Below, piece by piece: positions 4,181 to 32,133 of a stretch of 64,000 bases of DNA. The position numbers were made by a program, and so were the translations under genes. The DNA is taken from sequence record LC727701.1; one strand, given 5' to 3'. The notes under the pieces were generated by a model. It made no database searches. It was not told where the DNA came from and saw only the letters and a list, made by a program, of their open reading frames with translations. The stretch's first letter is position 1; the number at the start of each line of letters is the position of its first letter.

Positions 4181-6424
4181 ATGAGCGTACATGCCCTAAG
4201 AGAACTGTTTAAACACAAAGGCGAAAAGAATTACGAAGTCTTCTCAATGGAAGATTTCATTGGCCGCCTAGAAAGTGAAATTGGTCTAAATGACAGCGTT
4301 GTTAGTCAAGGTCGTTCCCTTATTAGCAGCATTTCACATGAAAACTTCGGTACCGTGCAAGCTACCGACATTCAAGATGCCGCTGCAATTTATAACAAAA
4401 TGCAAATGCTCGTTAACGACTATGGTTTCGAACGAGTAAGTTCCAGTGATCCTCAAGTACGTGCTCGTGAAGAACGTGTCCGTGAGAACCAAATCACTGC
4501 TGCTACCATGGCTGCTATCGCCTGTGCTGATGAAACTAAATATATCCGTGCACTACGTGGTATTACCAAAGCTAAAGCTTCTAATGAAGATCATGTTAAG
4601 GTTGTACAGCATCAGTTCAATGGCCCTGCTGGTGGCATTCAAGTATTCGAAAATGGTGTTGGCCTAGAGAACTATAACGAGAAGTCACAGCGTGATTTCC
4701 GTGTTGTAACTATTGGTTATAACCTAGCTGCTAGCCGTCAGGATGAATTCGCTGAGCGTATCTATCCGACCACCGTTATCAACCCGATTGAAGGTGGTGT
4801 TGTTCAGGTTCTTCCTTACATCGCTGTAATGAAAGACGTTTACCACGAAGTATCCGGCGTTAAGATGGATAACGAAGAAGTGAACATGGTAGAAGCCTAT
4901 CGTGATCCTTCCATCCTCGACGACGAAAGCATTGCACTAATTCCTGCCCTAGATCCGGCTGGTTCCAATGCTGACTTCTTCGTAGACCCGGCTCTTGTTC
5001 CTCCGTACACCATCAAGAACGAGCAGAACCTAACTATCACTACTGCTCCGCTAAAAGCGAACGTACGTCTTGATCTAATGGGTAACTCCAATGCTAACCT
5101 ACTCATCCAGCGTGGCATGCTTGAAGTTTCTGACACCATTGATCCGGCTGGTCGTCTAAAGAACCTATTCGTTCTACTCGGCGGTAAAGTTGTTAAGTTC
5201 AAGGTTGACCGTCTACCTCGCGCTGTGTTCCAGCCCGATCTAGTTGGTGATACCCGGAACGCAGTTATCCGTTTCGATAGCGATGACCTTGTTGTTAGTG
5301 GCGATACCACTTTCATCGACGGTTCAGCTGATGGCGTTATTAACGACCTTAAGACTGCTAAACTAAGCCTACGTCTAAGCGTTGGTTTCGGCGGTACTAT
5401 CAGCCTATCCAAAGGCGATTCTAAGTTTGGTGCTACCGACACTTACGTCGATAAAGTTCTAAACGAAGATGGTCAAGTAATGGATAATGCTGACCCGGCT
5501 GTTAAAGCTATTCTAGATCAGCTAACTGACCTAGCTGTTATCGGTTTCGAACTAGATACTCGCTTCACCAACACCAACCGTCGTCAGCGTGGTCACCTAC
5601 TACAGACCCGTGCACTACAGTTCCGTCATCCGATCCCGATGCACGCTCCTGTAACTCTACCGATGGACACCATGACCGATGAAGGTCCGGGTGAGGTTGT
5701 TAAAGCTCTAACCGTTAACACCAACATCCGTAACAGCAACAACGCTGTTAAGCGCATGCTTAACTACCTTGCTCAACTACGTGAAGTTGTACACAATGGT
5801 TACAACCGTCCGAAGTTTGGTATCATCGAAGGTGCACTATCCGCTGTAATGCGTCCGACCTATCGTTACAAAGAACTAGATCTTGAGAAAGTCATCGACA
5901 CCATCAAGTCTAAAGATCGTTGGGACGACGTTTGCGCTGCGATCCTAAACTGTGTTAAAGCTGAGCTATTCCCGGCTCACCGTGATTCCAACATTGAAGC
6001 TGCCTTCCGTGTTATCTCCGGTAACCAGGATGAAACTCCGATGTATCTCTTCTGCTCCGACAAAGAGATTGCTAACTATCTAATGACTAAAGGTGACGAC
6101 CGTACTCTAGGTGCTTATCTCAAGTACGATATCGTTTCCACCAACAACCAGCTATTCGATGGTAAGCTAGTTGTAATTCCGACCCGCGCAGTACAACAAG
6201 AAAACGACATCCTCTCCTGGGGTCAGTTCTTCTACGTATCTACTGTTATCGCTGACCTACCGATCACCCGTGGTGGTCACCAGGTTACTCGCGAAATCGC
6301 GGCCATTCCGTTCAACCTACACGTCAACAACATTCCGTTCGCACTAGAGTTCAAGATCACTGGCTTCCAGAAAGTCATGGGCGAAACTCAGTTCAACGGT
6401 AAGCTTGCTGATCTTAAGCCGTGA
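4181..6424 (+). CDS. Major capsid protein, phiKZ gp120-like
   Basis: 747 aa; recognised N-terminus MSVHALRELFKHKGEKNYEVFSME; strong codon bias; GLE|NYNEK fits the S/A/G-X-E head-protease motif; ends in TGA. Confidence 0.95.
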   Translation: MSVHALRELFKHKGEKNYEVFSMEDFIGRLESEIGLNDSVVSQGRSLISSISHENFGTVQATDIQDAAAIYNKMQMLVNDYGFERVSSSDPQVRAREERVRENQITAATMAAIACADETKYIRALRGITKAKASNEDHVKVVQHQFNGPAGGIQVFENGVGLENYNEKSQRDFRVVTIGYNLAASRQDEFAERIYPTTVINPIEGGVVQVLPYIAVMKDVYHEVSGVKMDNEEVNMVEAYRDPSILDDESIALIPALDPAGSNADFFVDPALVPPYTIKNEQNLTITTAPLKANVRLDLMGNSNANLLIQRGMLEVSDTIDPAGRLKNLFVLLGGKVVKFKVDRLPRAVFQPDLVGDTRNAVIRFDSDDLVVSGDTTFIDGSADGVINDLKTAKLSLRLSVGFGGTISLSKGDSKFGATDTYVDKVLNEDGQVMDNADPAVKAILDQLTDLAVIGFELDTRFTNTNRRQRGHLLQTRALQFRHPIPMHAPVTLPMDTMTDEGPGEVVKALTVNTNIRNSNNAVKRMLNYLAQLREVVHNGYNRPKFGIIEGALSAVMRPTYRYKELDLEKVIDTIKSKDRWDDVCAAILNCVKAELFPAHRDSNIEAAFRVISGNQDETPMYLFCSDKEIANYLMTKGDDRTLGAYLKYDIVSTNNQLFDGKLVVIPTRAVQQENDILSWGQFFYVSTVIADLPITRGGHQVTREIAAIPFNLHVNNIPFALEFKITGFQKVMGETQFNGKLADLKP

Positions 6425-6502
6425 GCTGGAAAGGGTTACCGTTATCTAGAAAATGGGACTATCCGTTATTTGGAAGACGGTAATGCCCGGAAGTTAGAAT
6501 AG
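6425..6502 (+). other. In-frame 25-codon extension after the MCP UGA (candidate readthrough domain AGKGYRYLENGTIRYLEDGNARKLE)
   Basis: Same frame as the MCP, ends TAG TAA, lies before the terminator, and repeats the C-terminal motif of the 31600-32133 protein. Confidence 0.7.
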
Positions 6503-6514
6503 TAACAGACATAG

Positions 6515-6534
6515 GCCCTCCCTTCGGGGAGGGC
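6515..6534 (+). terminator. Terminator of the capsid operon
   Basis: GCCCTCCC-TTCG-GGGAGGGC followed by TTTATG. Confidence 0.85.
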
Positions 6535-6543
6535 TTTATGTTG

Positions 6544-6579
6544 TATTACATTAAAAAAAGTTTAAGATCTATATTACAG
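6544..6579 (+). promoter_or_regulatory. phiKZ-type early promoter (virion RNAP)
   Basis: TATATTAC at 6570-6577, the established phiKZ early -10 motif; 35/36 nt identical to 58251-58286. Confidence 0.8.
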
Positions 6580-6620
6580 TAATGATCATGATCTTCTAAT
6601 TTAAAAATAGGTTAATCCAA

Positions 6621-7073
6621 ATGAACGTTCAATTATTTCCAGAAGTCATCGAAAGATGGCAGGATGCCCTGAGGGTATCTCTTATAGAAAAAAATACCAT
6701 GGTAGATAATAAGATGTCTACCGTAGATGATGATAAATACATTAATACTTTCTTTGAAGAATTCCATCCTGTTCAGGATGCCTTTATGCCCAAAGGGCTA
6801 GAGGACTTTATTACAGATTATGCCAAGAAAAACACTGAGGAGATCCCTCAAGAAAAACAGTTTAAGCGGGCCACCGAAAAGTTATATTGTTCGAGTGACC
6901 CGCATAAATGGCAGAAGTCAAGTAATAAGGAAAAGAGTGAATCCTTTAAGGGAAGGTCCGTACATCAAACTAAAAAGAGGCTCCCCAACATTGTAGATTT
7001 GGAGGCCGTTGTGATTAAGGTAGATTTCAATGGTAACACTAAAAATTGCGGGGCTTACTCAAGTATCAGTTAA
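6621..7073 (+). CDS. Hypothetical protein, 150 aa (gp121-like)
   Basis: AGGT SD; first gene after the early promoter. Confidence 0.7.
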   Translation: MNVQLFPEVIERWQDALRVSLIEKNTMVDNKMSTVDDDKYINTFFEEFHPVQDAFMPKGLEDFITDYAKKNTEEIPQEKQFKRATEKLYCSSDPHKWQKSSNKEKSESFKGRSVHQTKKRLPNIVDLEAVVIKVDFNGNTKNCGAYSSIS

Positions 7074-31599: not shown

Positions 31600-32133
31600 A
31601 TGCAGGATATCTTTCCGTATGACATGGCATCGAGGGACGCGCTAGTAAAACTTGCGCGGGATGATTTAAAAATAAACTTCAAACCAGAAACAGTTACATT
31701 TGAAGATATGTTTTTTAGTCCAACCACGATTGAGCCTGGACGTACATTTATTGAAATGATCGACATTACTACTGACATTAAGTACATGTTAACTTACCGT
31801 CGGTTAGATTTTGCTGATCCACGAGCTATTGGTGAAGGATCTATCCTTAAGATAGTTGGTACTTTAACACCTAAAGCAATTGCTGAAGAAATCAACCGTT
31901 CACGGGGTTGGAAGCTTGGACCAGATGATGTTTCATTTGATACAACACCAATCAATGCAACTACGGATGTTGTTCCATACACGATAGTAGCTATGTCGAG
32001 TAGTTATGCTTACTATGGTGAATGTAATATACTAATTCAACGTATTGATGATACATCGGATACTATCCGGCTATTAGAGAATGGCGCAGCACGTTATCTA
32101 GAAAATGGGACTATCCGTTATCTAGAAAGTTAA
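31600..32133 (+). CDS. Putative virion protein (gp143-like) with C-terminal RxLENG repeats
   Basis: GAGGT SD; LTYRRLDF motif; ends RLLENGAARYLENGTIRYLES. Confidence 0.8.
   Translation: MQDIFPYDMASRDALVKLARDDLKINFKPETVTFEDMFFSPTTIEPGRTFIEMIDITTDIKYMLTYRRLDFADPRAIGEGSILKIVGTLTPKAIAEEINRSRGWKLGPDDVSFDTTPINATTDVVPYTIVAMSSSYAYYGECNILIQRIDDTSDTIRLLENGAARYLENGTIRYLES
32092..32121 (+). repeat. Exact 30-nt direct repeat of 6440-6469
   Basis: CGTTATCTAGAAAATGGGACTATCCGTTAT at both loci, in the same reading frame (RYLENGTIRY). Confidence 0.95.

What the first reader, a model, noticed from the sequence alone, without database searches (positions are those of the whole stretch)
6422..6505. Candidate programmed UGA readthrough producing a C-terminally extended major capsid protein
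Seen: the MCP ends ...AAG CCG TGA and continues in frame GCT GGA AAG GGT TAC CGT TAT CTA GAA AAT GGG ACT ATC CGT TAT TTG GAA GAC GGT AAT GCC CGG AAG TTA GAA TAG TAA. This adds X-AGKGYRYLENGTIRYLEDGNARKLE (773 aa total). The single leaky-type stop comes first and the double stop last, all before the terminator at 6515. There is no SD or start codon ahead of the motif, so it can only be translated by readthrough. The peptide is a non-random 8-residue repeat (RYLENGTI/RYLEDGNA/RKLE) also ending the gp143-like protein. Most other genes here end in TAA. Established: extended minor capsid forms arise by readthrough (Q-beta A1) or frameshift (T7 gp10B). I do not recall this being described for phiKZ-like phages, but could not search. 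Inference: a few capsid subunits carry an extra tag.
Basis: partly seen in the sequence, partly recalled or inferred. Interest (0 to 1): 0.92.

Follow-up and report, generated by a model that had tools for sequence, protein, structure and literature searches.

The report
Leaky stop extends jumbo-phage capsid protein
In phiKZ and its Pseudomonas-phage relatives the major capsid gene ends in a conserved UGA followed, in frame, by a short conserved peptide-coding stretch, so a few capsid subunits probably get an extra C-terminal tail by ribosomal readthrough; this has not been reported for tailed DNA phages.

Summary
The window is a phiKZ-type phage. Its major capsid protein (MCP, gp120; 4181-6424) stops at TGA. 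Then come 25 in-frame sense codons (AGKGYRYLENGTIRYLEDGNARKLE), TAG TAA and a terminator hairpin.

An open frame of this length after a stop is not unusual here: 22% of window genes have one. Comparative data carry the case:
- 24 distinct relatives, with MCP identity down to about 59%, keep TGA followed in frame by the same octapeptide-repeat tail.
- Synonymous sites are saturated, all indels are multiples of three, and Arg is encoded by both CGN and AGG.
- The other two frames are closed by stops in almost all of them.
- Thirteen relatives without an extension end in TAA.
- Two relatives carry a folded Big_2 Ig-like domain directly after the TGA, with no start codon.
- None of 120 MCP cluster representatives has the extension fused through a sense codon.

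The same tail ends gp143 and many unrelated phage tail proteins.

Programmed UGA readthrough making a minor, C-terminally extended MCP is therefore well supported. It is not shown at protein level, and the function of the tail is unknown. This is a Qbeta-A1-like strategy in a new setting.

The parts
4181..6421 (+). Major capsid protein gp120, 747 codons
   Evidence: ORF list and translation. Pfam PhiKZ_MCP E 5.4e-228. 99-100% identical to phiKZ-type phages.
6422..6424 (+). UGA stop, proposed leaky. It is preceded by a Pro codon (CCG) and followed by G.
   Evidence: TGA is kept in all 26 relatives that carry an in-frame extension. The base after the stop is A17/G7/C2/U0, and the codon before it is Ala/Pro/Gly in 25 of 26.
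6425..6499 (+). In-frame 25-codon extension: AGKGY + RYLENGTI + RYLEDGNA + RKLE (octapeptide-repeat tail)
   Evidence: The peptide is conserved directly after the MCP stop in PhiPA3, PA1C, Phabio, 201phi2-1, Psa21, Noxifer, Viktualia and 16 metagenomic relatives. pN/pS is 0.56 in frame 0 against 0.88 and 1.10 in the shifted frames.
6440..6469 (+). 30-nt stretch identical to the 3' end of gene 143 (32092-32121)
   Evidence: Exact-match search
6433..6488 (+). Predicted long RNA hairpin starting 8 nt after the UGA. It is a possible readthrough stimulator, but its status is inconclusive.
   Evidence: MFE -28.3 kcal/mol, z -4.1 against dinucleotide shuffles. 68% of cells paired against 42-50% for slid partners. 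It is no more stable than synonymous recodings of the same peptide (mean z -0.43).
6500..6505 (+). Tandem stops TAG TAA that end the extension
   Evidence: In phage PA7 (L007) the TAG is GAG and the frame ends at the TAA.
6513..6536 (+). Terminator-like GC-rich hairpin followed by the conserved sequence TTTATGYYGT
   Evidence: The same arrangement is seen in all relatives.
31600..32133 (+). gp143 (177 aa), whose last 24 residues (32059-32130) are the same octapeptide-repeat tail
   Evidence: Orthologues in Phabio, Noxifer, PhiPA3 and metagenomes end in the same tail, and the invariant columns of the family are mostly in the tail. In the AF2 model residues 1-150 are confident and the tail is disordered.

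Best explanation
The MCP gene of phiKZ-type phages uses programmed readthrough of its UGA stop.

Most ribosomes terminate at 6422-6424 and make the 747-aa MCP. A minority decode the UGA, most likely with a host near-cognate tRNA that would insert Trp. They continue for 25 codons to TAG TAA and make a 773-residue MCP that carries a flexible C-terminal tail of three RxLE[D/N]Gxx repeats.

The six MCP C-terminal arms of a hexamer meet in a central helix bundle. A tail on every subunit would probably clash there. Readthrough sets a low copy number, and the stop codon itself is kept by selection.

The tail is a module that also ends gp143 and many unrelated phage tail proteins. It probably sits on the capsid surface at hexamer centres, as a docking or adhesion element in the architectural slot that Ig-like decoration domains occupy in other phages.

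Shown here: the anatomy, its conservation and coding-type selection.
Inferred: translation itself, the amino acid inserted, the fraction extended, the surface location and the function.
For: 1. The same arrangement (MCP, TGA, in-frame tail, stop, terminator) is found in eight cultured lineages and 16 metagenomic ones, with MCP identity down to about 59%.
2. Selection is coding-type. There are 22 distinct extension DNAs. Codon-position entropy is 0.99/0.93/1.34. pS is 0.65 (saturated) and pN 0.37 in frame 0, while shifted frames give ratios of 0.88 and 1.10. Frames +1 and +2 contain stops in 20/22 and 19/22 extensions. The conserved Arg is CGN in most and AGG in Noxifer. All indels are multiples of three.
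3. Stop type tracks the extension: TGA with extension 26, TAA without 13, with one exception each way. Fisher p = 1e-8, uncorrected for phylogeny. At least four tree-forced changes of stop type occur, and phylogenetically independent pairs go the same way 3-4 times and the opposite way 0 times. TGA ends only 17% of window genes.
4. In relatives L026 and L081 a Big_2 domain begins directly after the TGA with no nearby start codon, and it follows a low-complexity linker at the MCP end. The L081 and L031 extensions give dN/dS 0.19 in frame 0 against 1.19 and 1.52 shifted. AF2 folds residues 1-72 of the L081 piece as a beta-sandwich with pLDDT 92-94. Its first strand starts at codon 2. The closest PDB folds are Big_2 domains, and the list includes capsid chains of phi29 and mycobacteriophage Douge.
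5. None of 120 MCP cluster representatives has the extension fused through a sense codon.
6. The tail is genuinely translated elsewhere. It is the most conserved part of gp143 orthologues, which are annotated as virion proteins in Phabio and Noxifer.
7. [quoted passage not shown]
8. Structure: the MCP C-terminal arm is residues 728-747. Six arms form a central bundle in hexamers, and in pentamers the arm contacts the outer protein gp244 (PMC11297242). A C-terminal GFP fusion of the Goslar MCP still localises like capsids.
Against: - There is no direct evidence of translation. No peptide, footprint or reporter data were found.
- The cryo-EM model of the MCP ends at residue 747 and no extra density is described. 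Icosahedral averaging would hide a substoichiometric flexible tail, so this is weak evidence.
- There are two exceptions: L031 has TAA before a Big_2-plus-tail extension, and L079 has TGA with no extension.
- The sign test on independent pairs has little power (p = 0.125).
- The downstream hairpin cannot be separated from the coding constraint, so no dedicated stimulator is demonstrated.
- UGA leakiness in Pseudomonas at this context is unknown.
- The function of the tail is unknown. gp143 is reported as a non-essential cytoplasmic holin regulator (PMC12894885, PMC12676376). That report does not point to a capsid role.
Confidence: 0.8

Rival explanations
1. The post-stop ORF is translated on its own, by termination-reinitiation or a non-canonical start. 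This would give a free 25-aa peptide (or a free Big_2 protein in relatives) and no extended MCP.
For: L026 has an ATG at the third codon after the stop, preceded by AAAGGG. L031 has TAA, a poorly suppressible stop, before its extension.
Against: No ATG, GTG or TTG and no Shine-Dalgarno sequence is conserved at the start of the 22 aligned tails. Peptide conservation begins at the first codon after the stop. All 27 extensions start immediately after the stop and in the MCP frame, which an independent ORF does not need. In L081 and L031 the first beta-strand of the Big_2 fold starts at codon 2, and the MCP upstream ends in an interdomain-type linker.
Confidence: 0.07
2. The stretch is an untranslated RNA element, such as a 3' UTR hairpin, a stability element or a 3'-derived sRNA. 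Its conservation only looks like coding.
For: The RNA folds into a stable hairpin (-28.3 kcal/mol, z -4.1). Some compensatory pairs occur across relatives. phiKZ does make 3' UTR-derived ncRNAs elsewhere (PMC8545117).
Against: RNAalifold finds almost no consensus structure (-1.9 kcal/mol, no double-sided changes). Any synonymous recoding of the peptide folds equally well. Arg columns switch between CGN and AGG, third positions vary most, and only frame 0 stays open. There is no Rfam match. The same peptide is part of annotated proteins elsewhere. The known phiKZ ncRNAs map to other loci.
Confidence: 0.03
3. The extension is the decaying remnant of a once longer MCP, or of a fragment copied from gene 143. 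It is no longer expressed.
For: In phiKZ 30 nt are identical to gene 143, which shows DNA exchange between the two loci. Several relatives have lost the extension altogether.
Against: The frame, the motif and the TGA persist across lineages whose synonymous sites are saturated. The spacer after the second stop is not alignable between the same lineages. The loss events go together with a switch to TAA, which is not expected for a neutral relic.
Confidence: 0.03
4. The UGA is fully or specifically recoded. It could be read as selenocysteine through a SECIS-like hairpin, or by a phage or host suppressor tRNA, so that most or all MCP carries the tail.
For: A hairpin starts 8 nt after the UGA, which is a SECIS-like position.
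Against: There is no Rfam hit to any family, SECIS included. No tRNA is present in the window, and no suppressor is among the seven tRNAs of a near-identical phage. Ten window genes end in TGA with unrelated downstream sequence. The cryo-EM model of the MCP ends at residue 747. The hosts span several Pseudomonas species and unknown metagenomic hosts.
Confidence: 0.03

Closest known systems
Qbeta A1 (readthrough) protein of ssRNA leviviruses (from established knowledge)
   Same: The coat gene ends in a leaky UGA. A minority of ribosomes read through it using a host near-cognate tRNA. The product is a C-terminally extended coat protein that is incorporated in a few copies per capsid.
   Different: Qbeta is a small T=3 RNA phage. 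Its extension is a roughly 200-aa folded domain and has been shown experimentally. Here the virus is a 280-kb dsDNA myovirus with an HK97-fold MCP in a T=27 shell. The extension is a 25-aa repeat tail (a Big_2 domain in some relatives), and the evidence is comparative only.
Frameshift-extended major capsid proteins of tailed phages: T7 gp10B, Listeria phage PSA Cps, Lactobacillus phage A2 gp5B (from established knowledge)
   Same: The outcome is the same: a minor, C-terminally extended form of the major capsid protein, made by recoding at the very end of the gene.
   Different: Those use -1 or +1 frameshifting at slippery sites into another frame. Here the extension is in frame 0 directly after the stop, and the other two frames are closed.
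Ig-like decoration domains on phage structural proteins: lambda gpV, phi29 gp8 BIG2, T4 Hoc at hexamer centres, and the domains said to be often added by frameshifting (Fraser et al. 2006, from memory)
   Same: These are accessory modules at the C-terminus of the major capsid or tail tube protein. Relatives L026, L031 and L081 carry a Big_2 domain in exactly this slot. The octapeptide tail also ends a Phage_tail_2 tail tube protein.
   Different: The window phage has no Ig domain, only the short tail. The module is added by stop-codon readthrough. It is neither fused permanently nor supplied as a separate protein.
Luteovirus/polerovirus coat protein readthrough domain (from established knowledge)
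   Same: Readthrough of the coat-protein stop yields a minor surface-exposed extension.
   Different: That is a eukaryotic plant RNA virus with distant RNA stimulators and a large domain.
gp143 / phrog_2935 family (DUF7941-related) of chimalliviruses
   Same: It carries the same C-terminal (RxLE[D/N]Gxx)x2 + RxLE tail, with 30 nt identical in phiKZ.
   Different: In gp143 the tail is an ordinary part of the ORF. The globular part of gp143 has no similarity to the MCP.

Membership tests
Programmed stop-codon readthrough giving an extended capsid protein (Qbeta A1 type) | The capsid gene ends in a single leaky-type stop that is conserved among relatives | tested here: met
   TGA in all 26 relatives with an extension. 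Thirteen relatives without one use TAA.
Programmed stop-codon readthrough giving an extended capsid protein (Qbeta A1 type) | The downstream ORF is in frame 0, starts at the stop and has no initiation signals of its own | tested here: met
   No start codon or Shine-Dalgarno sequence is conserved.
Programmed stop-codon readthrough giving an extended capsid protein (Qbeta A1 type) | The extension is under purifying selection as protein | tested here: met
   pN/pS 0.56 against 0.88 and 1.10. dN/dS 0.19 against 1.19 and 1.52 for the Big_2 extensions. Indels are multiples of three and Arg switches between CGN and AGG.
Programmed stop-codon readthrough giving an extended capsid protein (Qbeta A1 type) | The extended protein is detected, and readthrough efficiency is above background | not testable with these tools
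   No proteomic, Ribo-seq or reporter data were found.
Programmed stop-codon readthrough giving an extended capsid protein (Qbeta A1 type) | A stimulatory context or downstream RNA structure | tested here: inconclusive
   The base after the stop is never U (A17 G7 C2). A hairpin lies 8 nt downstream, but it is no more stable than synonymous recodings and the consensus fold is weak.
Programmed ribosomal frameshift extension (T7 gp10B type) | The extension is encoded in the -1 or +1 frame after a slippery site | tested here: not met
   The extension is in frame 0. Frames +1 and +2 carry stops in 20/22 and 19/22 extensions.
Selenocysteine recoding | A SECIS element downstream of the UGA | tested here: not met
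   No Rfam family matched, even at E up to 10. A hairpin exists, but no consensus structure is conserved across relatives.
Stop-codon reassignment or phage suppressor tRNA | A suppressor tRNA, and in-frame TGA inside genes | tested here: not met
   [quoted passage not shown] Ordinary ORFs end at TGA.
Ig-like (Big_2) decoration domain | A Big_2 fold in the extension | tested here: not met
   The window extension has no Pfam hit. Relatives L026 (36.7 bits) and L031 (30.1 bits) pass the Pfam cut-off of 22.8. L081 scores 19.5 bits but folds as Big_2.
DUF7941 (for gp143, the other carrier of the tail) | A match to Pfam PF25613 | tested here: inconclusive
   E 0.0017, 18.3 bits, below the cut-off of 27. 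A 2026 preprint lists gp143 as a DUF7941 protein.

The most novel reading that the evidence does not exclude
The octapeptide-repeat tail is a general protein-docking tag of phage virion proteins, and readthrough doses it onto the capsid.

In phiKZ only two loci carry the tail: the MCP extension and gp143. The rare tailed MCP subunits would therefore either recruit a tail-binding partner to hexamer centres or compete with gp143 for that partner. Candidate partners are the globular domain of gp143 or other DUF7941 proteins, which are proposed to chain head-to-tail through flexible linkers. Competition would couple capsid production to the gp143-holin lysis timer.

A second, unrelated extension behind a UGA in PCH45 and SPLA10 would make MCP readthrough a recurrent strategy in Chimalliviridae.
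Probability: 0.15. Interest if true: 0.9.

Novelty: new variant of a known kind. Interest (0 to 1): 0.8.

Why it matters
phiKZ is the model nucleus-forming jumbo phage. Its capsid has been solved to near-atomic resolution and its virion proteome has been catalogued, yet this product would have been missed. It is absent from every annotation, and therefore from the search databases, and it would be averaged out in icosahedral reconstructions.

If it is real, it would be the first case I could find of programmed stop-codon readthrough building a structural protein of a tailed dsDNA phage. It would show a simple way to dose a surface module at sites where six C-termini converge. It also points to a widespread, uncharacterised C-terminal repeat tail on phage tail and head proteins.

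It can be tested directly. Existing mass-spectrometry raw files can be searched again, and single-codon phage mutants can be made. It also marks a natural low-copy display site on a therapeutic-candidate phage.

Tried and rejected
- **RNA structure as the conserved feature.** RNAalifold gave a near-empty consensus. A hand-drawn hairpin showed modest excess pairing. Synonymous-recoding controls removed the signal. I therefore keep the hairpin only as a possible by-product or helper.
- **Rfam scan of 6300-6700.** It gave only sub-threshold noise and no SECIS.
- **tRNA scan of the window.** Nothing was found.
- **Search for an MCP with the tail fused through a sense codon.** There was none among 120 representatives.
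- **Pfam, PHROG and PDB sequence searches for the tail and gp143.** There is no family for the tail and no solved structure of gp143.
- **AF2 of gp143 and of a Big_2-plus-tail extension.** The tail is disordered in monomers, so no fold can be proposed.
- **Literature searches** for readthrough in phiKZ or jumbo phages, for the motif letters, and for Ribo-seq. None was relevant.
- **Distant chimalliviruses.** LucasX, Deimos-Minion, DT01, SA002, PhiKp24 and pVa-21 end in TAA with no tail, so the feature is limited to the phiKZ clade.
- **The small GTG ORF 6421..6483 in another frame.** It is not conserved, because that frame is closed in most relatives.
Full report
**What is there.** The window is a phiKZ-type Pseudomonas jumbo phage. 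It is 100% identical to phage NK1 and 99.1% to phiKZ over 5900-6700. ORF 4181..6424 is the major capsid protein gp120 (747 aa; Pfam PhiKZ_MCP, E 5e-228). It ends AAG CCG TGA. The same frame then reads AGKGYRYLENGTIRYLEDGNARKLE, followed by TAG TAA at 6500-6505. A GC-rich terminator-like hairpin follows at 6513-6536. No ATG or GTG lies in frame in the extension.

The extension contains two and a half copies of an eight-residue unit, R-x-L-E-[D/N]-G-x-x. gp143 (31600..32133) ends in the same unit...IRLLENGAARYLENGTIRYLES*, and 30 nt are identical between the two loci (6440-6469 = 32092-32121).

**Is it more than chance?** Not by length. 22% of the 59 long ORFs in the window are followed by at least 25 open codons. 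The argument rests on comparison with relatives.

**Comparative test.** A tblastn search with the 25-aa piece alone hit unannotated DNA in PhiPA3 and the PA1C group, exactly at the first base after their MCP stop codons and in the MCP frame. I then read the MCP 3' ends of seven cultured lineages, 32 IMG/VR loci, Viktualia and nine contigs found through MCP homologues.

24 distinct relatives have TGA followed in frame by 24-30 codons with the same periodic tail, and then a stop and a terminator. Their MCP identity falls to about 59%. Examples:
- PhiPA3: *AGKGTLRYMENGNVRYLEDGVARRLDTPVI*
- Phabio: *TGKGTFRTLEDGTRRTLQDGQARLLE*
- Psa21: *SQPGNVRRLEDGSIRYSEDGTTQRYLE*
- Noxifer: *LPAAPSSRKFEDGSLRSTEGGVPRTLES*
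- L074 (90%-identical MCP): *GKRSYRYLEDGKTIRLLEDGTTYRQLEN*

**Selection on the extension.** The first 22 of these extensions collected all differ at DNA level. Their features are those of a translated sequence:
- Third codon positions vary most (entropy 0.99/0.93/1.34).
- Indels are multiples of three.
- Synonymous differences are saturated (pS 0.65) while pN is 0.37. The same alignment read in the two other frames gives ratios of 0.88 and 1.10.
- Those two frames contain stops in 20 and 19 of the 22.
- The conserved Arg is CGN in most lineages and AGG in Noxifer.

These features argue against a purely RNA-level constraint.

**The stop codon tracks the extension.** In the window TAA ends 42 of 59 genes and TGA only 10. 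Within the MCP clade the counts are:

| Stop | Extension present | No extension |
|---|---|---|
| TGA | 26 | 1 (L079) |
| TAA | 1 (L031) | 13 |

Fisher's exact test gives p = 1e-8, uncorrected for phylogeny. On an MCP tree the stop type changes at least five times, four of them forced by well-supported branches. In phylogenetically independent pairs the two traits move together 3-4 times and never in opposite directions. With so few pairs the sign test reaches only p = 0.125.

The base after the UGA is A (17), G (7) or C (2) and never U. The last sense codon is Ala, Pro or Gly in 25 of 26. None of 120 MCP cluster representatives has the tail fused through a sense codon. This suggests the stop itself is maintained.

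**Folded domains behind the stop.** Three metagenomic relatives have more than a short tail.
- In L026 the MCP ends in a Gly/Asp/Thr/Pro linker, then TGA, then 203 in-frame codons that open with a Big_2 Ig-like domain (Pfam 36.7 bits). Its near-identical relatives L027 and L028 lack the extension and end in TAA.
- In L081 an acidic linker and TGA are followed by 95 codons: a Big_2 domain and then RFLEDGSFRALENGLPRLLES.
- L031 has the homologous 95 codons, but after TAA.

The L081 and L031 extensions are 55% identical. They give dN/dS 0.19 in frame 0 against 1.19 and 1.52 in the shifted frames, and the other frames carry 4-8 stops each. AlphaFold2 folds residues 1-72 of the L081 piece as a beta-sandwich at pLDDT 92-94. 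Its first strand begins at the second codon after the stop, and the octapeptide tail is disordered. The nearest solved folds are Big_2 domains, and capsid chains of phi29 and mycobacteriophage Douge appear in the list.

A linker, a stop, and then a domain with no start codon makes sense only as a fusion made by reading through the stop.

**What the tail is.** A degenerate DNA pattern for the motif found 24 IMG/VR loci. In nearly all of them the repeats are the extreme C-terminus of a protein. These proteins include:
- gp143 orthologues;
- a Phage_tail_2 tail tube protein (E 6e-21);
- a Tail_P2_I protein (E 1e-37);
- tail proteins of about 770 aa, and others.

In the gp143 family the invariant columns are mostly in the tail. 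AF2 models residues 1-150 with confidence and leaves the tail flexible. The tail is thus a widespread, uncharacterised C-terminal module of phage virion proteins. It occupies the same slot as Ig-like decoration domains, and in L031 and L081 it follows one.

tblastn found only two places with the tail in each phiKZ-type genome: the MCP extension and gp143.

**Mechanism proposed.** Most ribosomes stop at UGA. A few read it, most likely with host tRNA-Trp (from general knowledge of UGA leakiness; not tested here), and add the tail. [quoted passage not shown]

The RNA after the stop folds into a long hairpin that starts 8 nt downstream (-28.3 kcal/mol, z -4.1). Similar hairpins are predicted in most relatives. 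However, any synonymous recoding of the peptide folds as well (mean z -0.43), and RNAalifold finds no consensus. Whether the hairpin helps readthrough is therefore open. Attenuation-type coupling is unlikely, because these phages transcribe inside a nucleus-like shell and translate outside it (review abstract, PMC12908238).

**Why a low dose fits the structure.** In the phiKZ capsid the C-terminal arm is residues 728-747. In each hexamer six arms form a central helix bundle around a pore about 9 Å wide. In pentamers the arm contacts the outer protein gp244 (PMC11297242). A tail or domain on all six subunits would converge on one point, whereas one per hexamer or fewer would fit. The position matches that of T4 Hoc (from memory). 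A T=27 shell has 1,615 MCP copies. Assumed readthrough of 1-5% would give roughly 16-80 tailed subunits per capsid. The Goslar MCP tolerates a C-terminal GFP and still goes to capsids.

**Function of the tail.** This is unknown. gp143 is reported as a non-essential, cytoplasmic regulator of the holin (PMC12894885, PMC12676376). It is also listed as a DUF7941 protein, a family proposed to chain head-to-tail through flexible linkers into fibres (bioRxiv 10.64898/2026.04.21.720040). My preferred inference is that the tail is a docking or adhesion element. That inference is weak.

**Rivals.** I considered and rated as unlikely:
- independent initiation of the post-stop ORF;
- a purely RNA element;
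- a decaying relic;
- Sec or suppressor recoding.

The reasons are given in the rival entries. The main open weakness is the absence of any protein-level evidence.

**Distribution.** Six distant chimalliviruses end their MCP gene in TAA with no tail. Serratia phage PCH45 and Salmonella phage SPLA10 both have MCP-linker-TGA-C followed in frame by a different conserved extension of 48 and 55 aa. Readthrough of the MCP stop may therefore have arisen more than once in this family.

**Novelty.** Searches of the paper library found nothing on translational readthrough in phiKZ or jumbo phages. The two cryo-EM papers on phiKZ do not mention it. None of the 47 phiKZ-type records annotates the stretch. 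The principle is known from Qbeta A1 and from the frameshift-extended MCPs of T7, PSA and A2. New here are its use by a tailed dsDNA jumbo phage, the repeat-tail module, and the tight link between stop type and extension.

Noticed in passing
L048 (Serratia phage PCH45) 1437-1583; L083 (Salmonella phage SPLA10) 598-765: A second, unrelated case. Both MCP genes end in a Pro-rich linker and TGA C, followed in frame by a conserved unannotated extension of 48 and 55 aa (L[SH]EIFK.EVL.GFALPA...TVDTE.G.PI.LE; 56% identity), then TAA and a terminator.
   Followed up: partly
L026 2428-3040; L081 3275-3565; L031 2443-2733: Metagenomic phiKZ-clade MCP genes with a low-complexity linker, a stop (TGA, TGA, TAA) and an in-frame Big_2 Ig-like domain. 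In L081 and L031 the domain is followed by the octapeptide tail. L027 and L028, near-identical to L026 in the MCP, lack the extension and end in TAA.
   Followed up: yes
L055, L068, L071, L072 (tail tube, Phage_tail_2); L073 (Tail_P2_I); L053, L063, L064, L070 (tail proteins of about 770 aa); L050, L051, L058: The (R-x-[LT]-E-D-G-x-x)x2-3 + RLLE tail is the extreme C-terminus of many unrelated virion proteins in non-jumbo phage contigs. I found no Pfam family or paper for it.
   Followed up: partly
window 6534-6545 and 6559-6569; the same positions in L001-L006: Two sequences are conserved in all relatives: TTTATGYYGT directly after the MCP terminator stem, and a TCTATATTAC-like box 20-45 nt further on. 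They probably include the promoter for the next gene (gp121). From memory, a TATG motif was described for phiKZ late promoters; I did not check this.
   Followed up: no
L045 (Ralstonia phage RP31) 1419-1470; L079 3317-3340: RP31's MCP ends ...TTTP TGA A with a 15-aa open extension and no motif. L079 has TGA T with only 5 open codons. It is the one clade member with TGA and no extension, and the only TGA followed by U.
   Followed up: no
L007 (phage PA7) 2401-2485: Within the phiKZ species the first of the two tandem stops varies. PA7 has GAG where the window has TAG, so its extension is 26 aa and ends at the TAA.
   Followed up: no
L041 (phage Viktualia) 2478-2576: A gene caller annotated a 32-aa 'hypothetical protein' overlapping the MCP end in a different frame from the conserved extension. 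It is probably a spurious call caused by the open region.
   Followed up: no
P0114-P0120, P0074, P0076, P0083, P0086, P0089, P0094, P0098, P0099 (MCP homologues); L027, L028, L035, L078, L080, L082: Many clade members end their MCP in a 15-30-aa acidic, Gly- or Thr/Pro-rich linker-like tail, usually finishing in Pro, followed by TAA and nothing else. These could be flexible tails at hexamer centres, or linkers left behind after loss of a readthrough domain.
   Followed up: partly
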